From NCBI RefSeq assembly GCF_036365525.1, contig NC_090399.1:66458862-66522861 (forward strand): a DNA stretch of 64,000 nt, in the 5' to 3' direction. Positions 3,831 to 30,300 of this stretch are shown one piece after another (the first letter of the stretch is position 1; each line of letters opens with the position of its first letter). The notes beneath the pieces were generated by a model. The model was not told the DNA's origin. It saw only the letters and a list, made by a program, of their open reading frames with translations, and did no database searches. Both the position numbers and the translations under genes were made by a program. Source of the stretch: Heterodontus francisci (Eukaryota).

Positions 3831-3926
3831 TCATCCAGAAATTCCCAGCTCCACACACTGTTTCCCTTTCACTTTAAACAGACAGGGGTTTATTTATGTA
3901 TAGGGACATTCAGCCTCCCCCTCCCC

Positions 3927-5575: not shown

Positions 5576-5851
5576 TCAGTCTGTTACTGCAGCTCAATAC
5601 AGCCCTGAGTGGAGAGAGACCAATCAGAATAAAGATCTGACTGTAATCATCTGTTGCTGGGCAGAGTGTGGGAATTCAGGTTTGTTCCAGACACACGAGC
5701 AGAGGAACAGCCTCCGGCTCCCCCTGTGGACAAAGGAGGATCTGCAGTGTGTCCTTTATTCATTGGGGGATAATGGGGAGGCAGTGCAGGGCTGATAGTG
5801 GGAGAGAGAGAGAGAGAGATCTCAGTGCATGGGGGGGTGGGTCCAGAGATC

Positions 5852-10034: not shown

Positions 10035-10150
10035 TCAACACCTCCCCACACACACACACAGATCAGCACAGACCATTAAACTTGTACATTCTCCCTGGTA
10101 ACTGATGATATCTACATTGCCTTTCTCTGAATGGATAGTTGAATTTATTT

Positions 10151-10242
10151 GGAAAGTTTATTTCCACAACTCCAGGACTCTCCTACCCAGAGACCGATGA
10201 TTCACAGGCTATTTTTATTCTCATTGGCTCACTGGTATATTA
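10151..10242 (+). promoter_or_regulatory. MHC-type promoter module: ISRE-like, X1, X2, Y box, TATA-like
   Basis: X1 CCCAGAGACCGATG (10186-10199); X2 TGATTCA (10198-10204); exactly 20 nt to Y box CTCATTGG (10220-10227), as in the HLA-DRA X-Y arrangement; imperfect ISRE AGTTTATTTCC (10155-10165); TATATTA (10236-10242). Confidence 0.68.
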
Positions 10243-10385
10243 GTGTCCGATCAGTATGGAGATGTCTGAGTAATCCGGAACACTTCCTGGTTTGATACAA
10301 TCAGCACTGCAATGGGCACACAGGCAGTTTGATGGGAAAGGATTCCCGACAATCTGTTCAACCCAGCCTATCGTGGGATGCAGCA

Positions 10386-10434
10386 ATGATTGGACTGATA
10401 GAGCTGGTCCTGCTGTGTGGAGGGGTCTCTGCAG
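10386..10434 (+). CDS. Exon 1 (signal peptide) of a probable MHC class I heavy-chain gene or pseudogene: MIGLIELVLLCGGVSA + G (phase 1)
   Basis: ATG at 10386 (G at -3), 16 mostly hydrophobic codons ending in the cleavage-type V-S-A, then G|GTGGGT donor (phase 1, as in MHC leader exons). The peptide resembles shark class I leaders as recalled (…LVLLCGGVSA) and sits ~160 bp downstream of an X-Y module. Confidence 0.62.
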
Positions 10435-10539
10435 GTGGGTAATGGGGACTGAGGGGGTCTGAGTGCCAGGCTGGGTACTGGGGTATTAACCCTGTCAGTG
10501 GGTGATGAGGACTGAGATGATCTCAGTGCTCGGCTGGGT
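10435..10539. repeat. 65-bp minisatellite, left part (starts at the splice donor)
   Basis: GTGGGTAATGGGGACTGAG.GGGTCTGAGTGCCAGGCTGGGTACTGGGGTATTAACCCT(C)GTCA; continues at 11740-11925 after the RTE insertion. Confidence 0.85.
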
Positions 10540-11739
10540 CTCCTTTGGCCTCCTTATCTCGAAAGACACTGGGTAAGCGCCTAGAGGTGGTCAGTGGTTT
10601 GTGGAGCAGCGCCTGGAGTGGCTATAATGGCCAATTCTAGAGTGACAGACTGTTTTTATTTATTTATTTTGAGATACAGCACTGAAACAGGCCGTTCGGC
10701 CCACCGAGTCTGTGCCGACCATCAACCACACATTTATACTAATCCTACATTAATCCGATATTCCTACCACATCCCCACGATTCCCCTACCACCTACCGAT
10801 ACTAGGGGAAATTTATAATGGCCAATTTACCAATCAACCTGCAAGTCTTTGGCAAGTCTTCCACAGGCGCTGCAGATAAAATTGGTTGTCGGGGCTGTTG
10901 CACAGTTGGCTCTCTCCTTGCGCTTCTGTCTTTTTTTCCTGCCAACTGCTAAGTCTCTTCGACTCACCACTCTTTAGCCCCACCTTTATGGCTGCCCGCC
11001 AGCTCTGGCGATTACTGGCAACTGACTCCCACGACTTGTGATCAATGTCACAGGACTTCATGTCGCGTTTGCAGACGTCTTTAAAGCGGAGACAATGACG
11101 GCCGGTGGGTCTGATACCAGTGGCGAGCTCACTGTCCAATGCATCCTTGGGGATCCTGCCATCTTCCATGCAGCTCACATGGCCAAGCCATCTCAAGCGC
11201 CGCTGGCTCAGTAGGGTGTATATGCTGGGGGTGTTGGCTGCCTCGAGGACTTCTGTGTTGCAGATGCGGTCCTGCCACCTGATGCCAAGGATTCTCTGGA
11301 GGCAGCGAAGATGGAATGAATTGAGACGTTGCTCTTGGCTGACATACGTTGTCCAGGCCTCGCTGCCGTAGAGCAAGGTACTGAGGACACAGGCTTGATA
11401 CACTCGGACTTTTGTGTTCCGTGTCAGTGCGCCATTTTCCCACACTCTCTTGGCCAGTCTGGACATAGCAGTGGAAGCCTTTCCCATGCGCTTGTTGATT
11501 TCTGCATCGAGAGACAGGTTACTGGTGATAGTTGAGCCTCGGTAGGTGAACTCTTGAACCACTTCCAGAGCGTGGTCGCTGATATTGATGGATGGAGCAT
11601 TTCTGACATCCTGCCCCATGATGTTCGTTTTCTTGAGGCTGATGGTTAGGCCAAATTCGTTGCAGGCAGCCGCAAACCTGTCGATGAGTCTCTGCAGGCA
11701 CTCTTCAGTGTTGGATGTTAATGCAGCATCATTAGCATC
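10540..11739 (-). mobile_element. RTE-clade LINE, 5'-truncated at the RT catalytic motif
   Basis: VYQACVLSTLLYGSEAW, FHLRCLQRILGIRWQD, RLRWLGHV..MEDGRIPK, RFKDVCKRDMK (RTE signature); 5' end reads A-N-D-A-A-L (degenerate ADDAAL) at ~11720-11737. Confidence 0.92.
10652..10857 (-). mobile_element. HE1/V-SINE-like element, 5'-truncated, nested in the RTE 3' end
   Basis: (TTTA)n tail, then TACAGCACTGAAACAGGCCGTTCGGCCCACCGAGTC matching the CR1 3' end at 1561-1600; body AATTTATAATGGCCAATTTACC..AACCTGCAAGTCTTTGG; RTE sequence rejoins as GACAGACT|CTTCCACAGG. Confidence 0.72.
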
Positions 11740-11925
11740 GAGGACTGAGATGACCTCAATGCCAGGCTGGGTACTGGGGTGTTAACCCTCGGTCAGTGGG
11801 TAATGGGGACTGAGAGGGTCTGAGTGCCAGGCTGGGTACTGGGGTATTAACCCTCGGTCAGTGGGTAATGGGGACTAAGAGGGTCTCAGTGCCAGGCTGG
11901 GTACTGGGATGTTAACCCTCAGTCA
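11740..11925. repeat. 65-bp minisatellite, right part (~3 units)
   Basis: GTGGGTAATG at 11796 and 11861 (period 65). Confidence 0.88.
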
Positions 11926-14681
11926 CAAAAAACAAGAGCAGGAGACCATTCAGCCCCTTAAGCCTGCTCCGCCATTCGAGAAGATCATGACTGATCTGAT
12001 TATGGCCTTAACTCCACTTTCCAGTCTACCCCCAAATCCCTTGATTCCCTTGTGAATCTAAAACCTAACCCTGCCTTGAATATATTCAATGACCCAGCCT
12101 CCACTGCTCTCTGGGGAAAAGAACTCCATCGACTAACAACCCTCTGAGAGCAAAGAAATTCACATCTCTGTCTTAAATGGGAGACCCCTAATTTTTAAAC
12201 TGTGTCCCCTAGTTCTAGTCTCTCCCACAAGGGGAAACATCCTCTCAGTATCCACCCTGTCAAGTCCCCTCAGGATCTTATATGTTTCAATAAGATCACC
12301 TCTCATTCTTCTAAACTCCAATGGGTACAGACCCAACCTGCTCAACCTTTCCACATAAAACAACCCCTTCATCTCAGGAATCAGACAAGTTGAACCTTCT
12401 CTGAACTGCTTCCAATGCAATGATATCCTTTCTTAAGTAAGGAGACCAAAACTGTACACAGTACTCCAGATGTGGTCTCTCCAAGGCCCCGTACAGCTGC
12501 AGCAAAACTTCTCTACTTTTACACTTGAATCCTGTTGCAATAAATGCCAACATTTCATTTGCCTTTCTAATCACTTGCTGTACCTGCATACTAACTTTTT
12601 GTGATTCATGTACCAGGACACCCAGATCCCTCTGTACCACCGAGTTCTGGAATCTCTCCATTTAAATAATATTCTGCTTTTCTACTGTCCCTGCTAAAGT
12701 GACTAAGTTCACATTTTCCCACATTATACTCCATCTGCCATATTTTTGCTCACTCACTTCACCTATCTATATCCCTGCGTAGACTCTTTACGTCCTTTTC
12801 ACAAGTTACTTTCCTACCTATCTTTGTGTCATGAGCAAATTTAGCAACTGTACCTTCAGTTCCTTCATCCAAGTCATTGATATAAATTGTAAATAGTACA
12901 GATCCCTGTGGCACTCCATTAGGTAGTTAGCCAACCCGAAAAAGACCCATTTATCCTGTTAGCTAACCAATCCTCTATCCATGCTAATATGTTACCCCCT
13001 ACACCATGAGCTCTTATTTTGTGTAGTAACATTTGATGTGGGTCCTTTATTAAATGCCTTTTGGAAATCCAAGTACACCACATCTACAGGTTCCCCTATC
13101 TCCACATTGTTCGTTACTCCCTCAAACAACTCTAATAAACTCACGCACCAGCCTGACTTGGAACTATATCGCCATTCCCTCACTGTCGCTGGGTCAAAAT
13201 CCTGGAACTCCCTTCCTAACAGCACTGTGGGTTCAGGAAGGCAGCTCACCAAGAAGGAAATTAGGGATGGGTAATAAATGCTGGCCTAGCCAGTGACAAC
13301 CGCATCCCATAAATGAATAAAAAAATTAGTCAAACATGATTTCCCTTTCACAAAACCATGTTGACTCTGCCTTATTGTATTGTGATTTTCTAAATGTCAT
13401 GCTATCAGCTCCTTTATAATGGATTATGGCATTTTCCCCTGTGACAGATGTTAGGCTAACTGGCCCATAGTTTCCTGCTTTCTGTCTCCCTCCTTTCTTG
13501 AATAGAGATGACACATTTGCAATTTTCTAATCTGCTGGGACCTTTCCAGTATCGAAAGAATTTTGGAAGATCATAACCACTACTTTCTCTGCAACCACTT
13601 CTTTTAGGACCCTAGGATACAAGCCAACAGGTCCAGGGGACTTGTCAGCCTTTCATTCTGATAGTTTTCCCAGTACTTTTTCCCCTAGTGATTGGCATTG
13701 TTTTAAGTTCCTCCCTCACTTTTACCTCTTGATCTTAAACTATTTTGGGGATTTTTTTGTGTCTTCTACAGTGAAGACAGACACAAAATACCTGTTCAAC
13801 ACTTCTGCTATTTCCTCATTTCCCAGTATTAATTCCCCAGTCTCACCCTCTAAGGGACCACACTCACTTTAGTTACTCTTTTCCTTTTTAAATACTTGTG
13901 GAGACTCTGACTCTGTTTTTATATTTCTAACTACCTTTCTCTCATACTTCAATTTCTCCCTCATTAACCTTTTAGTTATTTTTTGCTGGTTTCTAAAATC
14001 TGTCCAATCTTTGACCTACCAGTAATCTTCACAGTACTGTTCACTTTTTCTTTCAATGTGATACTGTCCTTAACTTCCTTCATTAGCCATGGACGGTGCT
14101 TCCTTCTCATATATTAAAAGTCTGCCACTGCTTCTCTACTGTTCTATCCTTTCACCTAATTTCCCAGTTTACTTTCACCAACTCTGTCCTCAAACTCTTC
14201 ATAATTGTCTTCATTTATGTTTCAGACACGAGTCTTAGACCCGCACTTGTCACCCTCAAACTGAATGTGAAATTCTATAATGTTATGATCACTGTTGCCT
14301 AGAGACTCCCTTACTATTGATCAATTGGCAGATATCCATTCACCAATATCAGGAAGCAGGAGACAGTCTCTGATCCACAACTGTTTTAGTCTCAATCCAC
14401 AGTTCAGTACAAATACCAGTTTCTATTCTTCCCTCCTGGACTAACTCCCTGTCCAGAAGTAGCTGCCCAACTTGGGGGTGGGTGGGGGGGAGCAGGGTAA
14501 ACCCAGCCCTTAAATACAAACTGCAATGAGCATTACCTGCTCTCTATTAACTCTGAAGTAAGTCCTGGTTAATTAAAGGGACCAGCATTTTCAACATGGT
14601 TAACTATGAGGTCATTAATTAATTCTGTCTCATTGCACATTCCCAGCTCTGAAATAACCTGCTCCCTGGTTAGCTCCAGAA
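11926..14681 (-). mobile_element. Second, more decayed CR1 LINE (different subfamily) with nested insertions
   Basis: LFKKGGRQKAGNYGPVSLTSV, VDVVYLDFQKAFNK, QRDLGVLV, RPHLEYCVQFWSP, LEFRRMRGDLIETYKIL; interrupted at 13140-13325 and ~14318-14600. The assignment of 14600-14681 to this element is from recalled CR1 sequence. Confidence 0.88.
13140..13325 (+). mobile_element. 3'-end fragment of the 8067-10034 LINE family inserted antisense into CR1
   Basis: CCTGACTTGGAACTATATCGCC...AAATCCTGGAACTCCCTTCC...TTAGGGATGGGTAATAAATGCTGGCCTAGCCAG...AATAAAAAAA is the reverse complement of 8067-8280 with internal deletions; CR1 resumes TTAGTCAAACATG. Confidence 0.85.
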
Positions 14682-15005
14682 CAGTATTGTCTAACCCTTT
14701 CAATTGGGCGGGGGCATATTACAATTTATGTCTTTCTTGGGGGGCCGGTGAGACAATTTAAGAAAGATAAAGGCATCAAAAAGTTATCTTGCTATTAATC
14801 AAAACAACAGCAAATGTGCATTTTTCTGAAGAAGCTTTAAATGAGAAGATTAATTTATTGTCTTACTTTCTCATCACTATGTTGGATATTGATTTAGTGA
14901 GATACTTGGCATTTTGTTGCTTGCACAAGTAGTCAGTGTCTGCCTGCACACATGAGGCGATGCAGAGTATTCTGGACAGATGTCCATCTGTCAGGAGTGA
15001 TCTCT
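14682..15005 (-). mobile_element. hAT (Charlie/SPIN-like) DNA transposon 3' fragment with terminal TIR-like end
   Basis: Terminus CAGTATTGTCTAACCCTTT (Charlie-like CAG...CAACCTTT); minus strand encodes RSLLTDGHLSRILCIASCVQADTDYLCKQ then, after a frameshift, CQVSH-stop, typical of hAT/GTF2IRD2-type transposase C-termini. Confidence 0.6.
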
Positions 15006-15310
15006 CTCTCCCAGTCTGTCTCTCTCCCTGTGTTGCCACCCCCCCCCCCCCCCCCACCCACGGTGTTGTTCTCCCCCTCTCTGTGTCGTCCTCGCTCTCT
15101 GTATCGCCCCCCTCTGTCCCCCCCATTCTCTCTTTGTGCCTGCCTCTCTCTATATCTCTCTCTCTGTCCTCCTCTCGCTCTGTTTCTGTCCCCCCCTCTC
15201 TGTGTCTCCCTCTCTCTCTCTGTCCCCATCTCTGTCCTGCCTCTCTCTCTCCCTGTTTCCACTGCCCCTCTCTGTTCCCGCTCTCTCTCTTTTCCCTCTT
15301 TCTCTCTCTC
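15001..15310. repeat. Pyrimidine-rich low-complexity tract with a C17 run (15039-15055)
   Basis: Degenerate (TC)/(TCTG)/(CCCC) sequence leading directly into the satellite. Confidence 0.85.
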
Positions 15311-18300
15311 TGTGGGGTTGGTGTTTTGGGGTTCATGCCCTGATGTCTATCTCTCGCTCTGTGGGGTTGGAGTTTTGGGGTTCATGCCCTGATGTCTATC
15401 TCTCTCTTTGGGGTTCATGCCCTGATGTCTCTCTCTCTCTGGGGTTGATGTTTTGGGGTTCATGCCCTGAAGTCTCTCTCTCTCTGGGGTTGATGTTTTG
15501 GGGTTCATGCCCTGATGTCTCTCTCTCTCTCTGCGGTTGATGTTTTGGGGTTCATGCCCTGATGTCTCTCTCTCTCTGGGGTTGATGTTTTGGGGTTCAT
15601 GCCCTGATGTCTCTCTCTCTCTCTTTGAGGTTGATGTTTCGGGGTTCATGCCCTGATGTCTCTCTCTCTCTTTGGGGTTGATGTTTTGGGGTTCACGCCC
15701 TGATGTCTCTCTCTCTGGGGTTGATGTTTTGGGGTTCATGCCCTGATGTCTCTTGCTGTCTGTGGGGTTGATGTTTTGGGATTCATGCCCTGATGTCTCT
15801 CTCTCTGTGGGTTTGATGTTTTGGGGTTCATGCCCTGATGTCTCTCTCTCTGTGGGGTTGATGTTTTGGGGTTCATGCCCTGATGTCTCTGTCTCTGGGG
15901 TTGATGTTTTGGGGTTCATGCCCTGATGTCTCTCTCTGTGTGGGGTTGATGTTTTGGGGTTCATGCCCTGATGTCCATCTCTCTCTCTCTGGGGTTGATG
16001 TTTTGGGGTTCATGCCCTGATGTCTCTCTCTCTCTGGGGTTGGTGTTTTGGGGTTCATGCCCTGATGTCTCACTCTTTCGCTGGGGTTGATGTTTTGGGG
16101 TTCATGCCCTGATGTCTCTCTCTTTCTCTGGGGTTGATGTTTTGGGGTTCATGCCCTGATGTCTCTCTCTCTGGGGTTGATGTTTTGGGGTTCATGCCCT
16201 GATGTCTCTCTCTCTGGGGTTGATGTTTTGGGGTTCATGCCCTGATGTCTCTCTCTTAGGGGTTGATGTTTTGGGCTTCATGCCCTGATGTCTCTCTCTC
16301 TCTGGGGTTGATGTTTTGGGGTTCATGCCCTGATGTCTCTCTCTCTCTGGGGTTGATGTTTTGGGGTTCATGCCCTGATGTCTCTCTCTCTCTGGGGTTG
16401 ATGTTTTGGGCTTCATGCCCTGATGTCTCTCTCTCTCTGGGGTTGATGTTTTGGGGTTCATGCCCTGATGTCTCTCTCTCTCTGGGGTTGATGTTTTGGG
16501 GTTCATGCCCTGATGTCTCTCTCTCTCTGGGGTTGATGTTTTGGGGTTCATACCCTGATGTCTCTCTCTCTGGGGTTGATGTTTTGGGGTTCAGGCCCTG
16601 ATGTCTCTCTCTCTCTCTCTCTCGGGTTCATGCCCTGATGTCTCTCTCTCTGGGGTTGATGTTTTGGGGTTCATGCCCTGATGTCTCTCTCTCTGGGGTT
16701 GATGTTTTGGGGTTCATGCCCTGATGTCTCTCTCTCTGGGGTTGATGTTTTGGGCTTCATGCCCTGATGTCTCTCTCTCTCTGGGGTTGATGTTTTGGGG
16801 TTCATGCCCTGATGTCTCTCTCTCTCTCTGGGGCTGGTGTTTTGGGGTTCATGCCCTGATGTCTCTCTCTCTGGGGTTGATGTTTTGGGTTCATGCCCTG
16901 ATGTCTCTCTCTCTCTGGGGTTGATGTTTTGGGGTTCATGCCCTGATGTCTCTTGCTGTCTGTGGGGTTGATGTTTTGGGGTTCATGCCCTGATGTCTCT
17001 CTCTCTGTGGGTTTGATGTTTTGGGGTTCATGCCCTGATGTCTCTGTCTCTGGGGTTGATGTTTTGGGGTTCATGCCCTGATGTCTCTCTCTGTGTGGGG
17101 TTGATGTTTTGGGGTTCATGCCCTGATGTCTCTGTCTCTGGGGTTGATGTTTTGGGGTTCATGCCCTGATGTCTCTCTCTCTCTGTGTGGGGTTGATGTT
17201 TTGGGGTTCATGCCCTGATGTCTCTGTCTCTGGGGTTGATGTTTTGGGGTTCATGCCCTGATGTCTCTCTCTGTGTGGGGTTGATGTTTTGGGGTTCATG
17301 CCCTGATGTCCATCTCTCTCTCTCTGGGGTTGATGTTTTGGGGTTCATGCCCTGATGTCTCTCTCTCTCTGGGGTTGGTGTTTTGGGGTTCATGCCCTGA
17401 TGTCTCTCTCTTTCGCTGGGGTTGATGTTTTGGGGTTCATGCCCTGATGTCTCTCTCTTTCTCTGGGGTTGATGTTTTGGGGTTCATGCCCTGATGTCTC
17501 TCTCTCTGGGGTTGATGTTTTGGGGTTCATGCCCTGATGTCTCTCTCTCTGGGGTTGATGTTTTGGGGTTCATGCCCTGATGTCTCTCTCTCTCTGGGGT
17601 TGATGTTTTGGGCTTCATGCCCTGATGTCTCTCTCTCTCTGGGGTTGATGTTTTGGGGTTCATGCCCTGATGTCTCTCTCTCTCTGGGGTTGATGTTTTG
17701 GGGTTCATGCCCTGATGTCTCTCTCTCTCTGGGGTTGATGTTTTGGGGTTCATGCCCTGATGTCTCTCTCTCTGGGGTTGATGTTTTGGGGTTCAGGCCC
17801 TGATGTCTCTCTCTCTCTCTCTCTCGGGTTCATGCCCTGATGTCTCTCTCTCTGGGGTTGATGTTTTGGGGTTCATGCCCTGATGTCTCTCTCTCTGGGG
17901 TTGATGTTTTGGGGTTCATGCCCTGATGTCTCTCTCTCTCTGGGGTTGATGTTTTGGGGTTCATGCCCTGATGTCTCTCTCTCTCTCTGGGGCTGGTGTT
18001 TTGGGGTTCATGCCCTGATGTCTCTCTCTCTGGGGTTGATGTTTTGGGTTCATGCCCTGATGTCTCTCTCTCTGGGGTTGATGTTTTGGGGTTCATACCC
18101 TGATGTCTCTATCGCTGGCGTTGATGTTTTGGGGTTCATGCCCTGATGTCTCTCTCTCATTGGGGTTGATTTTTTGGGGTTCATGCCGATGTCTCTCTCT
18201 TTGGGGTTGATGTTTTGGGGTTCATGCCCTGATGTCTCTCTCTCACTCTGGGGTCGGTGTTTTGGGGTTCATGCCCTGATGTCTCTCTCTTTGGGGTTCA

Positions 18301-21300
18301 TGCCCTGATGTCTCTCTCTCTCTTTGGGGTTGATGTTTTGGGGTTCATGCCCTGATGTCTCTCTCTTTGGGGTTGATGTTTTGGGGTTCATTCCCTGATG
18401 TCTCTCTCTTTGGGGTTCATGCCCTGATGTCTCTCTCTGGGGTTGATGTTTTGGGGTTCATGCCCTGATGTCTCTCACTCTCTGGGGTTGATGTTTTGGG
18501 GTTCATGCCCTGATGTCTCTCTCTTTGGGGTTCATGCCCTGATGTCTCTCTCTCTTTGGGGTTGATGTTTTGGGGTTCATGCCCTGATGTCTCTCTCTTT
18601 GGGGTTCATGCCCTGATGTCTCTCTCTCTCTGGGGTTGATGTTTTGGGGTTCATGCCCTGATGTCTCTCTCTCACTCTGGGGTCGGTGTTTTGGGGTTCA
18701 TGCCCTGATGTCTCTCTCTCTCTCTGGGGTTGATGTTTTGGGGTTTTTGCCCTGATGTCTCTCTCTCTGGGGTTGATGTTTTGGGGTTCATGTCCTGATG
18801 TCTCTCTCTTTGGGGTTCATGCCCTGATGTCTCTCTCTCTTTGGGGTTGATGTTTTGGGGTTCATGCCCTGATGTCTCTCTCTTTGGGGTTGATGTTTTG
18901 GGGTTCATGCCCTGATGTCTCGCTATTTGGGGTTGATGTTTTGGGGTTCTTGCCGATGTCTCTATCTTTGGGGTTGATGTTTTGGGGTTCTTGCCGATGT
19001 CTCTATCTTTGGGGTTGATGTTTTGGGGTTCATGCCCTGATGTCTCTCTCTCTCTGGGGTTGATGTTTTGGGGTTAATGCCCTGATGTCTCTCTCTTTGG
19101 GGTTGATGTTTTGGGGTTCATGCCCTGATGTCTCTCTCTCTCTGGGGTTGATGTTTTGGGGTTCATGCCCTGATGTCTCTCTCTCTTTGGGGTTGATGTC
19201 TTGGGGTTCATGCCCTGATGTATCTCTCTTTGGGGTTCATGCCCTGATGTCTCTCTCTCTGTGGGGTTGATGTTTTGGGGTTCATGCCCTGATGTCTCTC
19301 TCTTTGGGATTCATGCGCTGATGTCTCTCTCTCTGTGGGGTTGATGTTTTGGGGTTCATGCCCTGATGTATCTCTCTTTGGGGTTCATGCCCTGATGTCT
19401 CTCTCTCTGTGGGGTTGATGTTTTGGGATTCATGCCCTGATGTCTCTCTCTCTTTGGGGTTGATGTTTTGGGGTTCATGCCCTGATGTCTCTCTCTCTTT
19501 GGGGTTGATGTTTTGGGGTTCATGCCCTGATGTCTCTCTCTCACTCTGGGGTTGATGTTTTGGGGTTCATGCCCTGATGTCTCTCTCTCTCTGGGGTTGA
19601 TGTTTTGGGGTTCATGCCCTGATGTCTCTCTCTCTTTGGGGTTGATGTTTTGGGGTTCATGCCCTGATGTCTCTCTCTTTGGGGTTCATGCCCTGATGTC
19701 TCTCTCTCTTTGGGGGTTGATGTTTTGGGGTTCATGCCCTGATGTCTCTCTCTTTGGGGTTTATGTTTTGGGGTTCATGCCCTGATGTCTCTCTCTCTGG
19801 GGTTGATGTTTTGGGGTTCATGCCCTGATGTCTCTCTCTTTGGGGTTGCTGTTTTGGGGTTCATGCGCTGATGTCTCTCTCACTTTGGGGTTGATGTTTT
19901 GGGGTTCATGCCCTGATGTCTCTCTCTTTGGGGTTGATGTTTTGGGGTTCATGCCCTGATGTCTCTCTCTGGGGTTGATGTTTTGGGGTTCATGCCCTGA
20001 TGTCTCTCTTTGGGGATGATATTTTGGGGTTCATGCCCTGATGTCTCTCTCTCTGTGGGGTTGATGTTTTGGGGTTCATGCCCTGATGTCTCTCTCTCTG
20101 TGGGGTTGATGTTTTGGGGTTCATGCCCTGATGTCTCTCTCTCTCTGGGGTTGATGTTTTGGGGTTCATGCCCTGATGTCTCTCTCTATGTGGGGTTGAT
20201 GTTTTGGGGTTCATGCCCTGATGTCCATCTCTCTCTCTCTGGGGTTGATGTTTTGGGGTTCATGCCCTGATGTCTCTCTCTCTCTGTGGGGTTGATGTTT
20301 TGGGGTTCATGCCCTGATGTCTCTCTCTCTCTGGGGTTGATGTTTTGGGGTTCATGCCCTGATGTCTCTCGCTGTCTGTGGGGTTGATGTTTTGGGATTC
20401 ATGCTCTGATGTCTCTCTCTCTCTGGGGTTGATGTTTTGGATTTCATGCCCTGATCTCTCTCTCTCTGGGGTTGATGTTTTGGGGTTCATGCACTGATGT
20501 CTCTCTCTCTCTGGGGTTGATGTTTTGGATTTCATGCCCTGATCTCTCTCTCTCTGGGGTTGATGTTTTGCGGTTCATGCCCTGATGTCTCTCTCTCTGG
20601 GGTTGATGTTTTGGGGTTCATGCCCTGATGTCTCTCTCTTTGGGGTTGATGTTTTGGGGTTCATGCCCTGATGTCTCTCTCTCTGGGGTTGATGTTTTGG
20701 GGTTCATGCCCTGATGTCTCTCTCTTTAGGGTTGATGTTTTGGGGTTCATGCCCTGAAGTCTCTCTCTCTTTGGGGTTGATGTTTTGGGGTTCATGCCCT
20801 GATGTCTCTCTCTTTGGGGTTGATGTTTTGGGGTTCATGCCCTGATGTCTCTCTCTCTCTGGGGTTGATGTTTTGGGGTTCATGCCCTGATGTCTCTCTC
20901 TTTGGGGTTGATGTTTTGGGGTTCATGCCCTGATGTCTCTCTCTCTTTGGGGTTGATGTTTTGGGGTTCATGCCCTGATGTCTCTCTCTTTGGGGTTGAT
21001 GTTTTGGGGTTCATGCCCTGATGTCTCTCTCTTTGGGATTGATGTTTTGGGGTTCATGCCCTGATGTCTCTCTCTCTCTGGGGTTGATGTTTTGGGGTTA
21101 ATGACCTGATGTCTCTCTCTTTGGGTTTGATGTTTTGGGGTTCATGCCCTGCTGTCTCTCTCTCTTTGGGGTTGATGTTTTGGGGTTCATGCTTGGATGT
21201 CTCTCTCTTTGGGGTTCATGTTTTGGGGTTCATGCCCTGATGTCTCTCTCTTTGGGGTTGATGTTTTGGGGTTCATGCCCTGATGTCTCTCTCTTTGGGG

Positions 21301-24300
21301 TTCATGTTTTGGGGTTCATGCCCTGATGTCTCTCTCTTTGGGGTTGATGTTTTGGGGTTCATGCCCTGATGTCTCTCTCTCTTTGGGGTTGATGTTTTGG
21401 GGTTCATGCCCTGATGTCTCTCTCTCTCTCTCTCTGGGGTTGATGTTTTGGGGTTTTTGCCCTGATGTCTCTCTCTCTGGGGTTCATGTCCTGATGTCTC
21501 TCTCTCTTTGGGGTTGATGTTTTGGGGTTCATGCCCTGATGTCTCTCTCTTTGGGATTGATGTTTTGGGGTTCATGCCCTGATGTCTCTCTCTCTCTGGG
21601 GTTGATGTTTTGGGGTTTTTGCCCTGATGTCTCTCTCTCTGGGGTTGATGTTTTGGGGTTTTTGTCCTGATGTCTCTCTCTCTGGGGTTGATGTTTTGCG
21701 GTTCATGCCCTGATGTCTCTCTCTCTTTGGGGTTGATGTTTTGGGATTCATGCCCTGATGTCTCTCTCTTTGGGGTTGATGTTTTGGGGTTCATGCCCTG
21801 ATGTCTCTCTCTCTTTGGGGTTGATGTTTTGGGGTTCATGCCCTGATGTATCTCTCTTTGGGGTTCATGCCCTGATGTCTCTCTCTTTGGGGTTGATGTT
21901 TTGGGGTACATGCCCTGATGTCGCTCTCTTTGGGGTTCATGCCCTGATGTCTCTCTCTCTTTGGGGTTGATGTTTTGCGGTTCATGCCCTGATGTCTCTC
22001 TCTCTCTGGGGTTGATGTTTTGGGGTTTTTGCCCTGATGTCTCTCTCTCTGGGGTTGATGTTTTGGGGTTCATGCCCTGATGTCTCTCTCTTTGGGGTTC
22101 ATGCCCTGATGTCTCTCTCTCTCTTTGGGGTTGATGTTTTGGGGTTCATGCCCTGATGTCTCTCTCTTTGGGGTTGATGTTTTGGGGTTCATTCCCTGAT
22201 GTCTCTCTCTGGGGTTGATGTTTTGGGGTTCATGCCCTGATGTCTCTCTCTTTGGGGTTGATGTTTTGGGGTTCATGCCCTGATGTCTCTCTCTCTTTGG
22301 GTTGATGTTTTGGGGTTCATGCCCTGATGTATCTCTCTTTGGGGTTCATGCCCTGATGTCTCTCTCTTTGGGGTTGATGTTTTGGTGTTCATGCCCTGAT
22401 GTCTCTCTCTTTGGGATTGATGTTTTGGGGTTCATGCCCTGATGTCTCTCTCTCTCTGGGGTTGATGTTTTGGGGTTCATGCCCTGATGTCTCTCTCTCT
22501 CTCTGGGGTTGTTATTTTGGGGTTCATGCCCTGATGTCTCTCTCTTTGGGGTTCATGCCCTGATGTCTCTCTCTCTTTGGGGGTTGATGTTTTGGGGTTC
22601 ATCCCCTGATGTCTCTCTCTTTGGGGTTTATGTTTTGGGGTTCATGCCCTGATGTCTCTCTCTCTGGGGTTGATGTTTTGGGGTTCATGCCCTGATGTCT
22701 CTCTCTTTGGGGTTGATGTTTTGGGGTTCATGCCCTGATGTCTCTCTCACTTTGGGGTTGATGTTTTGGGGTTCATGCACTGATGTCTCTCTCTTTGGGG
22801 TTGATGTTTTGGGGTTCATGCCCTGATGTCCCTCTCTGGGGTTGATGTTTTGGGGTTCATGCCCTGATGTCTCTCTTTGGGGATGATATTTTGGGGTTCA
22901 TGCCCTGATGTCTCTCTCTCTGGGGTTGACGTTTTGGGGTTCATGCCCTGATGTCTCTCTCTCTCTGTGGGGTTGATGTTTTGGGGTTCATGCCCTGATG
23001 TCCATCTCTCTCTCTCTGGGGTTGATGTTTTGGGGTTCATGCCCTGATGTCTCTCTCTCTGTGGGGTTGATGTTTTGGGGTTCATGCCCTGATGTCTCTC
23101 TCTCTCTGGGGTTGATGTTTTGGGGTTCACGCCCTGATGTCCATCTCTCTCTCTCTGGGGTTGTTGTTTTGGGGTTCATGCCCTGATGTCTCTCTCTCTC
23201 TGTGGGGTTGATGTTTTGGGGTTCATGCCCTGATGTCTCTCTCTCTCTGCAGTTAATGTTTTGGGGTTCATGCCCTGATGTCTCTCTCTCTCTGTGGGGT
23301 TGATGTTTTGGGGTTCATGCCCTGATGTCTCTCTCTCTCTGGGGTTGATGTTTTGGGGTTCAAGCCCTGATGTCTCTCGCTGTCTGTGGGGTTGGTGTTT
23401 TGGGGTTGATGCCCTGATGTCTCTCTCTTTGGGGTTGATGTTTTGGGGTTCATGCCCTGATGTCTCTCTCTCTGGGGTTGATGTTTTGGGGTTCATGCCC
23501 TGATGTCTCTCTCTTTGGGGTTGATGTTTTGGGGTTCATGCCCTGATGTCTCTCTCTCTTTGGGGTTGATGTTTTGGGGTTCATGCCCTGATGTCTCTCT
23601 CTTTGGGGTTGATGTTTTGGGGTTCATGCCCTGATGTCTATCTCTCTCTGGGGTTGATGTTTTGGGGTTCATGCCGATGTCTCTCTCTTTGGGGTTGATG
23701 TTTTGGGGTTCATGCCCTGATGTCTCTCTCTCTTTGGGGTTGATGTTTTGGGGTTCATGCCCTGATGTCTCTCTCTTTGGGGTTGATGTTTTGGGGTTCA
23801 TGCTCTGATGTCTCTCTCTCTGGGGTTGATGTTTTGGGGTTCATGCCCTGATGTCTCTCTCTCTCTGGGGTTGATGTTTTGGGGTTAATGCCCTTATGTC
23901 TCTCTCTTTGGGGTTGATGTTTTGGGGTTCATGCCCTGATGTCTCTCTCTTTCTCTGGGGTTGATGTTTTGGGGTTCATGCCCTGATGTCTCTCTCTCTG
24001 GGGTTGATGTTTTGGGGTTCATGCCCTGATGTCTCTCTCTTTGGGGTTGATGTTTTGGGGTTCATGCCCTGATGTCTCTCTCACTTTGGGGTTGATGTTT
24101 TGGGGTTCATGCACTGATGTCTCTCTCTTTGGGGTTGATGTTTTGGGGTTCATGCCCTGATGTCCCTCTCTGGGGTTGATGTTTTGGGGTTCATGCCCTG
24201 ATGTCTCTCTTTGGGGATGATATTTTGGGGTTCATGCCCTGATGTCTCTCTCTCTGGGGTTGACGTTTTGGGGTTCATGCCCTGATGTCTCTCTCTCTCT

Positions 24301-27300
24301 GTGGGGTTGATGTTTTGGGGTTCATGCCCTGATGTCCATCTCTCTCTCTCTGGGGTTGATGTTTTGGGGTTCATGCCCTGATGTCTCTCTCTCTGTGGGG
24401 TTGATGTTTTGGGGTTCATGCCCTGATGTCTCTCTCTCTCTGGGGTTGATGTTTTGGGGTTCACGCCCTGATGTCCATCTCTCTCTCTCTGGGGTTGTTG
24501 TTTTGGGGTTCATGCCCTGATGTCTCTCTCTCTCTGTGGGGTTGATGTTTTGGGGTTCATGCCCTGATGTCTCTCTCTCTCTGCAGTTAATGTTTTGGGG
24601 TTCATGCCCTGATGTCTCTCTCTCTCTGTGGGGTTGATGTTTTGGGGTTCATGCCCTGATGTCTCTCTCTCTCTGGGGTTGATGTTTTGGGGTTCAAGCC
24701 CTGATGTCTCTCGCTGTCTGTGGGGTTGGTGTTTTGGGGTTGATGCCCTGATGTCTCTCTCTTTGGGGTTGATGTTTTGGGGTTCATGCCCTGATGTCTC
24801 TCTCTCTGGGGTTGATGTTTTGGGGTTCATGCCCTGATGTCTCTCTCTTTGGGGTTGATGTTTTGGGGTTCATGCCCTGATGTCTCTCTCTCTTTGGGGT
24901 TGATGTTTTGGGGTTCATGCCCTGATGTCTCTCTCTTTGGGGTTGATGTTTTGGGGTTCATGCCCTGATGTCTATCTCTCTCTGGGGTTGATGTTTTGGG
25001 GTTCATGCCGATGTCTCTCTCTTTGGGGTTGATGTTTTGGGATTCATGCCCTGATGTCTCTCTCTCTTTGGGGTTGATGTTTTGGGGTTCATGCCCTGAT
25101 GTCTCTCTCTTTGGGGTTGATGTTTTGGGGTTCATGCTCTGATGTCTCTCTCTCTGGGGTTGATGTTTTGGGGTTCATGCCCTGATGTCTCTCTCTCTCT
25201 GGGGTTGATGTTTCGGGGTTAATGCCCTTATGTCTCTCTCTTTGGGGTTGATGTTTTGGGGTTCATGCCCTGATGTCTCTTTCTTTGGGTTTCATGTTTT
25301 GGGGTTCATGCCCTGATGTCTCTCTCTTTGGGGTTGATGTTTTGGGGTTCATACCCTGATGTCTCTGTCTCTCTGCAGTTAATGTTTTGGGGTTCATGCC
25401 CTGATGTCTCTCTCTCTCTGTGGGGTTGATGTTTTGGGATTCATGCCCTGATGTCTCTCTCTCTCTCTGGGGTTGATGTTTTGGGGTTCATGCCCTGATG
25501 TCTCTCTCTCTCTCTGGGGTTGATGTTTTGCGGTTCATGCCCTGATGTCTCTCTCTTTGGGGTTGATGTTTTGGGGTTCATGCCCTGATGTCTCTCTCTC
25601 TGGGGTTGATGTTTTGGGGTTCATGCCCTGATGTCTCTCTCTTTGGGGTTGATGTTTTGGGGTTCATGCCCTGATGTCTCTCTCTCTTTGGGGTTGATGT
25701 TTTGGGGTTCATGCCCTGATGTCTCTCTCTTTGGGATTGATGTTTTGGGGTTCATGCCCTGATGTCTCTCTCTCTCTGGGGTTGATGTTTTGGGATTCAT
25801 GCCCTGATTTCTCTCTCACACTCTGGGGTTGATGTTTTGGGGTTCATGCCCTGATGTCTCTCTCTCTCTGGGGTTGATGTTTTGGGGTTCATGCCCTGAT
25901 GTCTCTCTCTCTCTCTCTGGGGTTGTTATTTTGGGGTTCATGCCCTGATGTCTCTCTCTTTGGGGTTCATGCCCTGATGTCTCTCTCTCTTTGGGGGTTG
26001 ATGTTTTGGGGTTCATCCCCTGATGTCTCTCTCTTTGGGGTTTATGTTTTGGGGTTCATGCCCTGATGTCTCTCTCTCTGGGGTTGATGTTTTGGGGTTC
26101 ATGCCCTGATGTCTCTCTCTTTGGGGTTGATGTTTTGGGGTTCATGCCCTGATGTCTCTCTCACTTTGGGGTTGATGTTTTGGGGTTCATGCACTGATGT
26201 CTCTCTCTTTGGGGTTGATGTTTTGGGGTTCATGCCCTGATGTCCCTCTCTGGGGTTGATGTTTTGGGGTTCATGCCCTGATGTCTCTCTTTGGGGATGA
26301 TATTTTGGGGTTCATGCCCTGATGTCTCTCTCTCTGGGGTTGACGTTTTGGGGTTCATGCCCTGATGTCTCTCTCTCTCTGTGGGGTTGATGTTTTGGGG
26401 TTCATGCCCTGATGTCCATCTCTCTCTCTCTGGGTTTGATGTTTTGGGGTTCATGCCCTGATGTCTCTCTCTCTCTCTGGGGTTGATGTTTTGGGGTTCA
26501 TGCCCTGATGTCTCTCTCTCTGTGGGGTTGATGTTTTGGGGTTCATGCCCTGATGTCTCTCTCTCTCTGGGGTTGATGTTTTGGGGTTCACGCCCTGATG
26601 TCCATCTCTCTCTCTCTGGGGTTGATGTTTTGGGGTTCATGCCCTGATGTCTCTCTCTCTCTGTGCGGTTGATGTTTTGGGGTTCATGCCCTGATGTCTC
26701 TCTCTCTCTGCAGTTAATGTTTTGGGGTTCATGCCCTGATGTCTCTCTCTCTCTGTGGGGTCGATGTTTTGGGGTTCATGCCCTGATGTCTCTCTCTCTC
26801 TGGGGTTGATGTTTTGGGGTTCAAGCCCTGATGTCTCTCGCTGTCTGTGGGGTTGGTGATTTGGGGTTCATGCCCTGATGTCTCTCTCTTTGGGGTTGAT
26901 GTTTTGGGGTTCATGCCCTGATGTCTCTCTCTCTGGGGTTGATGTTTTGGGGTTCATGCCCTGATGTCTCTCTCTTTGGGGTTGATGTTTTGGGGTTCAT
27001 GCCCTGATGTCTCTCTCTCTTTGGGGTTGATGTTTTGGGGTTCATGCCCTGATGTCTCTCTCTCTCTGGGGTTGATGTTTTGGGGTTCATGCCGATGTCT
27101 CTCTCTTTGGGGTTGATGTTTTGGGGTTCATGCCCTGATGTCTCTCTCTCTTTGGGGTTGATGTTTTGGGGTTCATGCCCTGATGTCTCTCTCTTTGGGG
27201 TTGATGTTTTGTGGTTCATGCTCTGATGTCTCTCTCTTTGGGGTTGATGTTTTGGGGTTCATGCCCTGATGTCTCTCTCTCTCTGGGGTTGATGTTTTGG

Positions 27301-30300
27301 GGTTAATGCCCTTATGTCTCTCTCTTTGGGATTGATGTTTTGGGGTTCATGCCCTGATGTCTCTTTCTTTGGGTTTCATGTTTTGGGGTTCATGCCCTGA
27401 TGTCTCTCTCTTTGGGGTTGATGTTTTGGGGTTCATACCCTGATGTCTCTGTCCCTCTGCAGTTAATGTTTTGGGGTTCATGCCCTGATGTCTCTCTCTC
27501 TCTGTGGGGTCGATGTTTTGGGGTTCATGCCCTGATGTCTCTCTCTCTCTGGGGTTGATGTTTTGGGGTTCAAGCCCTGATGTCTCTCGCTGTCTGTGGG
27601 GTTGGTGATTTGGGGTTCATGCCCTGATGTCTCTCTCTTTGGGGTTGATGTTTTGGGGTTCATGCCCTGATGTCTCTCTCTCTGGGGTTGATGTTTTGGG
27701 GTTCATGCCCTGATGTCTCTCTCTTTGGGGTTGATGTTTTGGGGTTCATGCCCTGATGTCTCTCTCTCTTTGGGGTTGATGTTTTGGGGTTCATGCCCTG
27801 ATGTCTCTCTCTCTCTGGGGTTGATGTTTTGGGGTTCATGCCGATGTCTCTCTCTTTGGGGTTGATGTTTTGGGGTTCATGCCCTGATGTCTCTCTCTCT
27901 TTGGGGTTGATGTTTTGGGGTTCATGCCCTGATGTCTCTCTCTTTGGGGTTGATGTTTTGTGGTTCATGCTCTGATGTCTCTCTCTTTGGGGTTGATGTT
28001 TTGGGGTTCATGCCCTGATGTCTCTCTCTCTCTGGGGTTGATGTTTTGGGGTTAATGCCCTTATGTCTCTCTCTTTGGGATTGATGTTTTGGGGTTCATG
28101 CCCTGATGTCTCTTTCTTTGGGTTTCATGTTTTGGGGTTCATGCCCTGATGTCTCTCTCTTTGGGGTTGATGTTTTGGGGTTCATACCCTGATGTCTCTG
28201 TCCCTCTGCAGTTAATGTTTTGGGGTTCATGCCCTGATGTCTCTCTCTCTCTGTGGGGTTGATGTTTTGGGATTCATGCCCTGATGTCTCTCTCTCTCTC
28301 TGGGGTTGATGTTTTGCGGTTCATGCCCTGATGTCTCTCTCTTTGGGGTTGATGTTTTGGGGTTCATGCCCTGATGTCTCTCTCTCTGGGGTTGATGTTT
28401 TGGGGTTCATGCCCTGATGTCTCTCTCTTTGGGGTTGATGTTTTGGGGTTCATGCCCTGATGTCTCTCTCTCTTTGGGGTTGATGTTTTGGGGTTCATGC
28501 CCTGATGTCTCTCTCTTTGGGGTTGATGTTTTGGGGTTCATGCCCTGATGTCTCTCTCTCTCTGGGGTTGATGTTTTGGGGTTCATGCCGATGTCTCTCT
28601 CTTTGGGGTTGATGTTTTGGGGTTCATGCCCTGATGTCTCTCTCTCTTTGGGGTTGATGTTTTGGGGTTCATGCCCTGATGTCTCTTTCTCACTCTGGGG
28701 TTGATGTTTTGCGGTTCATGCCCTGATGTCTCTCTCTTTGGGGTTGATGTTTTGGGGTTCATGCCCTGATGTCTCTCTCTCTGGGGTTGATGTTTTGGGG
28801 TTCATGCCCTGATGTCTCTCTCTTTGGGGTTGATGTTTTGGGGTTCATGCCCTGATGTCTCTCTCTCTTTGGGGTTGATGTTTTGGGGTTCATGCCCTGA
28901 TGTCTCTCTCTTTGGGGTTGATGTTTTGGGGTTCATGCCCTGATGTCTCTCTCTCTCTGGGGTTGATGTTTTGGGGTTCATGCCGATGTCTCTCTCTTTG
29001 GGGTTGATGTTTTGGGGTTCATGCCCTGATGTCTCTCTCTCTTTGGGGTTGATGTTTTGGGGTTCATGCCCTGATGTCTCTCTCTTTGGGGTTGATGTTT
29101 TGGGGTTCATGCTCTGATGTCTCTCTCTTTGGGGTTGATGTTTTGGGGTTCATGCTCTGATGTCTCTCTCTCTGGGGTTGATGTTTTGGGTTAATGCCCT
29201 TATGTCTCTCTCTTTGGGGTTGATGTATTGGGGTTCATGCCCTGATGTCTCTCTCTCTTTGGGGTTGATGTTTTGGGGTTCATGCCCTGATCTCTCTTTC
29301 TTTGGGTTTCATGTTTTGGGGTTCATGCTCTGATGTCTCTCTCTTTGGGGTTGATGTTTTGGGGTTCATGCCCTGATGTCTCTCTCTCTCTGGGGTTGAT
29401 GTTTTGGGATTCATGCCCTGATGTCTCTTTCTCACTCTGGGGTTGATGTTTTGGGGTTTTTGCCCTGATGTATCTCTCTCTGGGGTTGATGTTTTGGGGT
29501 ACATGCCCTGATGTCTCTCTCTTTGGGGTTCATGCCCTGATGTCTCTCTCTCTTTGGGGTTGATGTTTTGGGGTTCATGCCCTGATGTCTCTCTCTTTGG
29601 GGTTGATGTTTTGGGGTTCATGCCCTGATGTCTCTCTCTCTTTGGGGTTGATGTTTTGGGGTTCATGCCCTGATGTATCTCTCTTTGGGGTTCATGCCCT
29701 GATGTCTCTATCTTTGGGATTGATATTTTGGGGTTCATGCCCTGATGTCTGTCTCTCTCTGGGGTTGATGTTTTGGGATTCATGCCCTGATGTCTCTCTC
29801 TCACTCTGGGGTTGATGTTTTGGGGTTCATGCCCTGATGTCTCTCTCTCTCTGGGGCTGATGTTTTGGGGTTCATGCCCTGATGTCTCTCTCTCTGGGGT
29901 TGATGTTTTGGGGTTCCTGCCCTGATGTCTCTCTCTTTGGGGTTGATGTTTTGGGGTTCATGCCCTGATGTCTCTCTCTCTTTGGGGTTGATGTTTTGGG
30001 GTTCATGCCCTGATGTCTCTGTCTTTGGGGTTGATGTTTTGGTGTTCATGCCCTGATGTCTCTCTCTGGGGTTGATGTTTTGGGGTTCATGCCCTGATGT
30101 CTCTCTTCGGGGATGATATTTTGGGGTTCATGCCCTGATGTCTCTCTCTCTGTGGGGTTGATGATTTGGGGTTCATGTCCTGATGCCCATCTCTCTCTCT
30201 CTGGGGTTGATGTTTTGGGGTTCATGCCCTGATGTCTCTCTATCTGGGGTTGATGTTTTGGGGTTCATGCCCTGATGTCTCTCTCTTTGGGGTTGATGTT

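What the first reader, a model, noticed from the sequence alone, without database searches (positions are those of the whole stretch)
10141..10440. Hidden MHC-like gene start: SXY-type promoter plus a phase-1 leader exon in a 400-bp island between LINEs
Seen: X1 CCCAGAGACCGATG, overlapping X2 TGATTCA, a 20-nt spacer, Y box CTCATTGG, an upstream ISRE-like AGTTTATTTCC, then ATG...MIGLIELVLLCGGVSA G|GTGGGT. Established: the RFX/CREB/NF-Y X-Y module with this spacing marks MHC class I/II and B2M promoters (NLRC5/CIITA enhanceosome), and MHC leader exons end in phase 1. Inference: this is exon 1 of an elasmobranch MHC class I gene (classical or non-classical), too short for the ORF track and easily missed by annotation.
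Basis: partly seen in the sequence, partly recalled or inferred. Interest (0 to 1): 0.85.

Follow-up and report, generated by a model that had tools for sequence, protein, structure and literature searches.

The report
Shark MHC class I first exon
This is the true promoter and first (signal-peptide) exon of a non-classical MHC class I gene of a horn shark. It is transcribed and spliced, but public annotation already includes it, so it is an ordinary gene start with an unusually large satellite-filled first intron.

Summary
The X1, X2 and Y motifs and the short ATG-to-GT reading frame are in the sequence, with small coordinate corrections. The "ISRE-like" element fails a standard ISRE core test.

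The class I interpretation is supported.
- A RefSeq protein of Heterodontus francisci, XP_067865031.1 ("MHC class I-related gene protein-like", isoforms X1-X4), begins with exactly the 35 residues encoded by window 10332-10436. It then continues into alpha1, alpha2, alpha3, the transmembrane segment and the tail.
- The 16-residue leader is the conserved elasmobranch class I leader. The classical horn-shark cDNA differs only by E6V.
- An RNA-type contig from the same animal matches 10298-10435 perfectly and then leaves the genome exactly at the predicted donor. DNA contigs read through the donor.

"Missed by annotation" is wrong.

No other exon of the gene lies in the window. Intron 1 is therefore at least 53.6 kb, of which 48.6 kb is a 43-45-bp satellite.

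The gene falls in a non-classical clade, probably UBA, and has Phe in place of Tyr at pocket positions 7, 59 and 171.

A second X-Y module with identical spacing lies on the minus strand at 5620-5661. The scan had only this same note on this stretch.

Interest is low to moderate.

The parts
10186..10199 (+). X1-type (RFX-type) box CCCAGAGACCGATG
   Evidence: Sequence. It is an exact match to CCYAGNNACNGATG; there are 2 exact matches in the window against 0.27 expected. It agrees at 10 of 14 positions with the HLA-DRA X1 sequence printed as a probe in PMC4806502.
10198..10204 (+). X2-like heptamer TGATTCA, overlapping X1 by TG. It is closer to an AP-1 site than to a CRE.
   Evidence: Sequence. 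It is part of the composite pattern found once against 0 expected.
10220..10227 (+). Y box CTCATTGG, an inverted CCAAT and an NF-Y-type site. ATTGG starts 37 nt after the start of X1.
   Evidence: The module at 5620-5661 has the same 37-nt offset.
10236..10242 (+). TATA-like TATATTA. The transcription start inferred from it lies at about 10265-10298.
   Evidence: Sequence. RNA-type runs have zero depth over 10096-10243, and their first contig starts at 10298. The transcription start itself is an inference.
10298..10434 (+). Minimum transcribed extent of exon 1: the 5' leader, which contains small upstream ORFs at 10312-10332 and 10378-10389, plus the signal-peptide coding part.
   Evidence: X5 contig 26 (229 nt, depth 19) matches 10298-10435 with no differences. 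Its other 91 nt lie on nothing in the stretch laid, 9800-12000.
10332..10434 (+). Coding part as annotated in RefSeq. An in-frame upstream ATG adds 18 residues before the conserved leader.
   Evidence: tblastn of P0007 residues 1-35 against 10332-10436 gives 100% identity. Sequence of P0007.
10386..10434 (+). Conserved class I leader MIGLIELVLLCGGVSA plus the first base of a Gly codon. The exon ends in phase 1.
   Evidence: The leader matches 16 of 17 residues of the classical horn-shark cDNA O19480, and 13-16 of 17 in many sharks and rays.
10435..10440 (+). Splice donor GTGGGT
   Evidence: The RNA-type contig stops matching at 10435. The extra G fits the GGN Gly codon of the spliced form. DNA contig X1 no. 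3 reads through to 10485.
10435..64000 (+). Intron 1, which is not complete within the window. It holds a 65-bp minisatellite (10437-10540 and 11742-11925) split by a retroelement insertion, further retroelement debris up to about 15300, and then the 43-45-bp satellite at 15407-64000.
   Evidence: No residue of P0007 beyond 35 is encoded anywhere in the window.
5620..5661 (-). Second X1-X2-Y module, in divergent orientation. Its X1 is CCCAGCAACAGATG and ATTGG lies at the same 37-nt offset. No exon was found behind it.
   Evidence: No leader was found on the minus strand.

Best explanation
Window 10186-10434 is the proximal promoter and first exon of a non-classical MHC class I heavy-chain gene. 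The species is most likely Heterodontus francisci, and the RefSeq proteins are XP_067865030 to XP_067865033.

Proposed mechanism:
- An X1-X2-Y module with a TATA-like box about 10 nt behind it directs transcription from roughly 10265-10298.
- Exon 1 carries a 5' leader with small upstream ORFs and the signal peptide. It ends in phase 1 at 10434.
- It is spliced from the GTGGGT donor, across an intron of at least 53.6 kb that is mostly a 43-45-bp satellite, to the alpha1 exon outside the window.

Shown here: the motifs and their non-random arrangement; the identity of the exon with the annotated protein's N-terminus; transcription of the exon; and the break of an RNA-type contig at the donor.

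Inferred: which factors bind the module (RFX, a CREB/ATF or AP-1-like factor, and NF-Y, recruiting NLRC5 or CIITA); the exact transcription start; which of the two in-frame ATGs is used; and the full intron length.
For: - P0007 begins with exactly the 35 residues of 10332-10436 and continues as a complete alpha1-alpha2-alpha3-TM-tail class I chain carrying PF00129 and PF07654.
- The unbiased HMMER search of 1.84 billion proteins returned a single hit. It is a horn-shark class I protein in which the homologous leader abuts GSHSLRYF.
- The leader is conserved across at least 40 shark and ray class I proteins.
- RNA-type runs from the same animal have zero depth on the promoter (10096-10243) and positive depth on the exon. 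Contig 26 matches 10298-10435 without a difference, and its other 91 nt lie on nothing in the laid stretch. The DNA contig reads through the donor.
- The X-Y composite is not expected by chance, and it recurs with identical spacing at 5620-5661.
- The tree places the protein in a clade supported at 100/99 with a Squalus sequence, apart from the classical sequences.
Against: - The 91 nt beyond the donor were not shown to me, so the acceptor and the alpha1 identity of that contig are inferred from the RefSeq model.
- The RNA nature of runs X5, X10 and X11 is the tool's guess, although the silent promoter supports it.
- Expression of this copy is low: depth 19, 0 and 35. Leader transcripts carrying V6 reach 980, 40,458 and 3,861.
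- The leader has a Glu in its hydrophobic core, and the 5' leader holds upstream ATGs.
- No S box could be identified at the expected distance, and the ISRE claim fails.
Confidence: 0.9

Rival explanations
1. This is an orphaned leader exon. It would be a relic first exon and promoter of a decayed class I copy, cut off from any body by satellite expansion. It would be only occasionally spliced to a downstream class I gene that normally uses its own leader, so the RefSeq model would be a low-level chimeric form.
For: - Intron 1 is at least 53.6 kb and almost wholly satellite.
- RNA depth for this allele is very low compared with V6-leader transcripts.
- The leader carries Glu at position 6, and the 5' leader has upstream ATGs.
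- A second X-Y module at 5620-5661 has no exon behind it, which shows that promoter relics do occur here.
Against: - All four RefSeq isoforms use this exon.
- The reading frame through the joint is intact and yields a complete class I chain.
- Leaders with E6 occur in apparently intact class I proteins of Mustelus and in another horn-shark gene.
- The RNA-type contig shows use of the donor.
Confidence: 0.08
2. This is a chance arrangement of motifs plus a chance short ATG-to-GT frame in non-genic DNA between repeats.
For: X1 alone with one mismatch is at chance level. The ISRE-like element is not real.
Against: - The stretch is 35 of 35 residues identical to an annotated class I protein.
- The leader is conserved across elasmobranchs.
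- There is RNA coverage with a break at the donor.
- The composite motif is never seen in shuffles.
Confidence: 0.01
3. The exon is real, but the X1-X2-Y look-alike is not a working enhanceosome site. Transcription would be driven by other elements.
For: - The X1 half-site AGAGAC departs from the RFX consensus RGYAAC (consensus from memory).
- X2 is TGATTCA rather than a CRE.
- No S box was found at about 16 nt, yet the S box is the specificity determinant for NLRC5 in mouse (PMC4374748).
- Expression is low.
Against: - The order X1-X2-Y, the TG overlap of X1 and X2, and the position about 100 nt upstream of the first transcribed base all fit the module as described in PMC7922096 and PMC4374748.
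- The same 42-nt architecture recurs at 5620-5661 with a near-perfect X1.
Confidence: 0.3

Closest known systems
Heterodontus francisci RefSeq gene encoding XP_067865030.1 to XP_067865033.1 ('major histocompatibility complex class I-related gene protein-like', isoforms X1-X4), on a 74,466,956-nt chromosome
   Same: The first 35 residues are identical to the translation of window 10332-10436, and the junction lies at the same phase-1 Gly codon. This is almost certainly the same locus.
   Different: RefSeq starts translation at the upstream in-frame ATG (10332). The rest of the gene lies outside the window and could not be read.
Shark non-classical class I clade containing Squalus acanthias Q8HWH7. 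From memory this is the UBA lineage; PMC12562908 and PMC10751288 describe UBA as an expanded, multicopy, MHC-linked family.
   Same: The protein groups inside this clade with 100/99 support. It shares the clade's 4-residue insertion at the start of alpha3 and its connecting-peptide and TM sequence. It lies on a chromosome with many class I genes.
   Different: It has a long branch (0.57). It carries Phe instead of Tyr at the positions aligned with Tyr7, Tyr59 and Tyr171 (numbering from HLA-A2, from memory). I did not verify the lineage name in a paper; the two Almeida papers were not held.
Classical horn-shark class I cDNA O19480 / AAC60348.1 and its genomic copies
   Same: The leader matches at 16 of 17 residues and is followed by the same GSHS start of alpha1.
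   Different: Position 6 is Val rather than Glu. These transcripts, or close paralogues, are 50 to over 1000 times more abundant in the RNA-type runs (variant 10402 A>T). They belong to a different clade.
[quoted passage not shown]
   Same: The order X1-X2-Y is the same, X1 and X2 overlap, and an inverted CCAAT serves as Y. The module lies upstream of the transcription start. X1+X2 agree at 13 of 19 positions with the HLA-DRA X box printed in PMC4806502. The module at 5620-5661 agrees at 13 of 14 positions in X1.
   Different: No S box was recognised at the expected distance. X2 is AP-1-like. No ISRE or enhancer A lies next to it. Factor binding is untested. That the X-Y distance equals that of HLA-DRA rests on my memory of that promoter, not on a tool result.

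Membership tests
MHC class I heavy-chain gene (first exon) | A signal-peptide exon ending in phase 1 and joined directly to an alpha1 domain (Pfam MHC_I) | tested here: met
   The exon ends after the first base of a Gly codon. P0007 continues with alpha1 and carries PF00129. The relative P0001 has MHC_I starting at the residue after the leader.
MHC class I heavy-chain gene (first exon) | The complete chain has the alpha2 disulfide, a C1-set alpha3 domain and a transmembrane segment | tested here: met
   Alignment A3 shows the invariant Cys pairs of alpha2 and alpha3 and a hydrophobic TM stretch. PF07654 is recorded for the protein. These exons lie outside the window.
MHC class I heavy-chain gene (first exon) | The exon is transcribed and its donor is used | tested here: met
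   The RNA-type contig matches 10298-10435 and then diverges, the DNA contig reads through, and the promoter is silent in the RNA-type runs. Caveat: these are contigs rather than reads, and the joined letters were not shown.
Classical (class Ia) MHC class I | Conserved Tyr residues that hold the peptide N-terminus (positions 7, 59 and 171 of HLA-A2; numbering from established knowledge) | tested here: not met
   P0007 has Phe at all three aligned positions. The classical shark sequences in the alignment keep Tyr, except one Ala at 59.
Classical (class Ia) MHC class I | High, broad expression | tested here: not met
   Depth is 19, 0 and 35 for this allele, against 980, 40,458 and 3,861 for V6-leader transcripts in three RNA-type runs. 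Contig depths are only a rough measure.
Shark UBA non-classical lineage | Monophyly with the founding Squalus acanthias sequence | tested here: inconclusive
   The clade with Q8HWH7 has 100/99 support. That Q8HWH7 is the UBA founder is from memory; the defining papers were not held.
SXY enhanceosome module | X1, X2 and Y boxes in this order with constrained spacing, upstream of the transcription start | tested here: met
   its position relative to the RNA comes. PMC4374748 gives Y at 20-22 bp from the X box for NLRC5 targets. Here the distance is 15-18 nt, depending on how the box edges are drawn.
SXY enhanceosome module | An S (W) box about 16 bp upstream of X | tested here: inconclusive
   No position matrix was available. 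GGACTCT at 10175-10181 resembles the class II S heptamer (from memory) but lies only 4 nt from X1.
SXY enhanceosome module | Occupancy by RFX, CREB/ATF and NF-Y, and dependence on NLRC5 or CIITA | not testable with these tools
   This needs ChIP, gel shift or reporter assays in shark cells.
Class I promoter ISRE | A match to the core GAAANNGAAAS next to the SXY module | tested here: not met
   There is no match with up to one mismatch between 10000 and 10400.

The most novel reading that the evidence does not exclude
A shark class I gene keeps working although its 49-nt leader-coding segment is separated from alpha1 by an intron of over 50 kb (perhaps over 100 kb) made almost wholly of one 43-45-bp satellite. 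Its promoter carries a class II-like X1-X2-Y module. That module is duplicated in divergent orientation 4.5 kb away, with exactly preserved spacing. [quoted passage not shown] Satellite expansion inside MHC-Ib genes would then be a tolerated, possibly expression-damping, feature of this genome.
Probability: 0.4. Interest if true: 0.5.

Novelty: already known. Interest (0 to 1): 0.27.

Why it matters
The gene start is real but already annotated, so nothing hidden was uncovered. Two by-products may interest comparative immunologists.

- **SXY module in a cartilaginous fish.** This is a concrete, testable X1-X2-Y module, with a second copy at identical spacing. Three full-text searches (SXY with shark; CIITA and NLRC5 with cartilaginous fish; and the 2023 elasmobranch MHC paper) found no description of shark MHC promoters.
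- **Giant satellite intron.** This is direct evidence that a class I gene with an intron 1 of at least 53.6 kb, filled with satellite, is still transcribed and spliced. It fits other first-stage notes on this chromosome about satellite-filled MHC introns.

Tried and rejected
- The search for homologous proteins with the 47-aa open frame 10296-10436 found no candidate in the allowed length range. That says nothing about longer proteins, and the representative search then found one.
- A full-text search for the leader peptide returned 0 papers.
I could fetch neither the rest of the gene nor the promoters of paralogues.
- The search of earlier findings does not accept places beyond 64000.
- Papers PMC8454915 and PMC7002201 are not held.
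- Rfam found nothing in the window.
- ISRE core: no match at the promoter.
- A candidate third module at about 3790-3880 on the minus strand has a perfect ISRE, a kappaB-like site and a 13-mer shared with the X2 region. It shows no wider homology to the promoter, and the shared 13-mer has roughly a 0.1 chance expectation. I left it as unexplained.
- Class II or beta2-microglobulin identity was considered, because the X box looks class II-like. It was rejected.
- An Ig or TCR V-gene split leader was considered. It was rejected because the exon encodes the whole signal peptide and the annotated continuation is alpha1.
- No signal-peptide predictor was available.
- The joined exon 1 plus exon 2 sequence was not built or searched. 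Exon 1 was searched by reference only.

Full report
**1. What is in the sequence**

- X1 CCCAGAGACCGATG lies at 10186-10199.
- X2-like TGATTCA lies at 10198-10204.
- Y box CTCATTGG lies at 10220-10227.
- A TATA-like TATATTA lies at 10236-10242.
- An ATG at 10386 opens MIGLIELVLLCGGVSA, followed by the first base of a Gly codon. The exon ends at 10434 and is followed by GTGGGT.
- The same frame is open upstream to an ATG at 10332.
- Two tiny upstream ORFs, at 10312-10332 and 10378-10389, overlap the two candidate start codons.

**2. Is it more than chance?**

- X1 alone with one mismatch is at chance level: 5 found, 5.5 expected.
- There are two exact matches against 0.27 expected.
- The composite X1-X2-gap-ATTGG pattern was never seen in 100 shuffles.
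- The looser pattern, X1 plus 19-27 nt plus ATTGG, gives two hits against none expected. Both span exactly 42 nt.
- The second hit is on the minus strand at 5620-5661. Its X1, CCCAGCAACAGATG, differs at one position from the HLA-DRA X1 printed as a probe in PMC4806502.
- The 'ISRE-like' element does not match the ISRE core even with one mismatch.

**3. Surroundings**

- The stretch is a single-copy island. DNA contig depth is 8-16 over 10096-10465 and 10^5-10^6 in the flanks.
- A reverse-transcriptase fragment lies upstream at 9034-9459 on the minus strand.
- Directly behind the donor starts a 65-bp minisatellite. It resumes at 11742-11925, so a retroelement has inserted into it.
- Retroelement debris follows. 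From 15407 to the window's end there is a 43-45-bp satellite.
- No class I exon other than the leader exists anywhere in the window.
- Rfam finds nothing.

**4. Expression**

Three runs from the same animal, which the tool guesses to be RNA, were compared with its DNA run.
- The RNA-type runs have zero depth on the promoter (10096-10243), where the DNA run has 10-16. This serves as a silent-stretch control.
- They have positive depth on the exon.
- Contig 26 of run X5 (229 nt) matches 10298-10435 without a difference. Its other 91 nt lie on nothing in the stretch laid (9800-12000).
- The DNA contig reads through to 10485.
- The one extra matching base, G at 10435, is what a spliced GGN Gly codon predicts.
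- I could not see the 91 letters.
- A variant, 10402 A>T (Glu6 to Val), is carried by far more abundant contigs: depth 980, 40,458 and 3,861, against 19, 0 and 35 for the window's own form.

**5. Identity**

- A search of the 47-aa open frame in the length-limited protein index found nothing.
- A search of the 35-aa frame against 1.84 billion representatives gave one hit (E = 5.8e-4). It is a horn-shark class I protein in which the homologous leader is followed at once by GSHSLRYF and a Pfam MHC_I domain.
- Searching with that protein returned 112 relatives.
- Among them, P0007 (XP_067865031.1, H. francisci, 380 aa, on a 74.47-Mb chromosome) starts with exactly the 35 residues of 10332-10436. 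It goes on through alpha1, alpha2, alpha3, the TM segment and the tail.
- Isoforms X1-X4 all share this start.
- The exon is therefore already part of a public gene model. The window most likely comes from that genome.
- The classical horn-shark cDNA O19480 has the same leader with Val6, which explains the abundant A>T contigs.
- The leader is conserved in at least 40 shark and ray class I proteins.

**6. Which kind of class I**

- In a maximum-likelihood tree the protein sits inside a clade supported at 100/99. The clade also holds Squalus acanthias Q8HWH7 and sequences from Heptranchias, Pristiophorus and catsharks. It is apart from the classical sequences.
- The protein shares that clade's alpha3 insertion and connecting peptide.
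- From memory this is the UBA lineage. PMC12562908 and PMC10751288 describe UBA as an expanded, multicopy, MHC-linked family. The defining papers were not held.
- The protein has Phe where classical molecules have Tyr7, Tyr59 and Tyr171 (numbering from established knowledge of HLA-A2).
- It is weakly expressed.
- It is therefore non-classical.

**7. Mechanism**

Shown:
- the motif architecture;
- transcription of the exon, but not of the promoter;
- use of the donor;
- continuity of the reading frame into a complete class I chain.

Inferred:
- The X1-X2-Y module is bound by RFX, a bZIP factor and NF-Y, and recruits NLRC5 or CIITA, as in mammals (PMC7922096, PMC4374748).
- Transcription starts about 25-60 nt behind the TATA-like box.
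- Intron 1 is at least 53,566 nt within the window and continues beyond it.

An earlier first-stage note (s1-872063) reports a class I-like gene about 61 kb beyond the window's end, with a 32.8-kb minisatellite intron before the cytoplasmic exon. Two features of the isoforms fit that description. Isoforms X1-X3 differ only by point changes in an unusual tail, and X4 has the canonical tail. I could not read that DNA, so the link is an inference. It would make intron 1 roughly 110 kb.

**8. Comparison and novelty**

The gene start is a known thing in a known family and is annotated. The claim that it was missed is wrong.

The library searches I ran found no description of the following points for sharks:
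- the explicit X1-X2-Y module in a cartilaginous fish;
- its exact duplicate spacing in a second, divergently oriented copy;
- the evidence that a satellite-filled giant first intron is still spliced.

These are modest additions of a known kind.

**9. Limits**

- The RNA evidence rests on contigs, not reads.
- That the X-Y distance equals that of HLA-DRA, and the S-box heptamer, rest on memory.
- The joined exon 1 plus exon 2 form was neither built nor searched.

Noticed in passing
window 5620-5661 (minus strand), context 5540-5770: A second X1-X2-Y module in divergent orientation, 4.5 kb from the first. Its X1 is CCCAGCAACAGATG, and ATTGG lies at the identical 37-nt offset. It shares TTTATTCT before ATTGG with the first module. 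It runs straight into the 49-bp minisatellite at 3925-5541. No leader exon was found behind it. It may be a relic promoter, or the promoter of a gene that leaves the window on the left.
   Followed up: partly
window 3790-3876 (minus strand): A perfect ISRE core (GAAAGGGAAAC, overlapped by AAAGTGAAAG) is followed by the kappaB-like GGGAATTTC and by the 13-mer GATGATTCACAGG, which is identical to the X2 region of the class I promoter. No wider homology was found. It may be chance or a promoter fragment.
   Followed up: partly
window 15407-64000: A single 43-45-bp satellite (also periodic at 88 bp, with sub-variants at 29, 72 and 74 bp) fills at least 48.6 kb. It has a strong strand asymmetry (AT skew about -0.7). 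It lies inside intron 1 of the class I gene.
   Followed up: partly
window 10437-10540 and 11742-11925: A 65-bp minisatellite begins right at the splice donor. Its unit contains a near-copy of the donor sequence with the GT destroyed. It is split by a 1.2-kb retroelement insertion.
   Followed up: partly
window 10402: The A>T variant (Glu6Val in the leader) is seen in about 40% of DNA depth and in nearly all RNA depth. The RNA signal is best explained by paralogous or classical class I transcripts that share the leader. Whether the DNA signal is the other allele or a paralogue is not settled.
   Followed up: partly
proteins P0007, P0113, P0114, P0115 (outside the window): RefSeq isoforms X1-X3 differ only by single residues in an unusual 34-residue tail. 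X4 has the canonical class I tail. This suggests repeated alternative tail exons, in line with first-stage note s1-872063.
   Followed up: partly
proteins P0001 and P0002 (horn-shark unplaced scaffold): Their annotated N-termini are translations of an 18-residue tandem repeat that has expanded inside the 5' leader homologous to window 10292-10385. This is another case of minisatellite growth inside these class I genes.
   Followed up: no
window 3925-5541: A 49-bp minisatellite of 33 copies at 92% identity lies between the minus-strand X-Y module and the ISRE-containing stretch.
   Followed up: no
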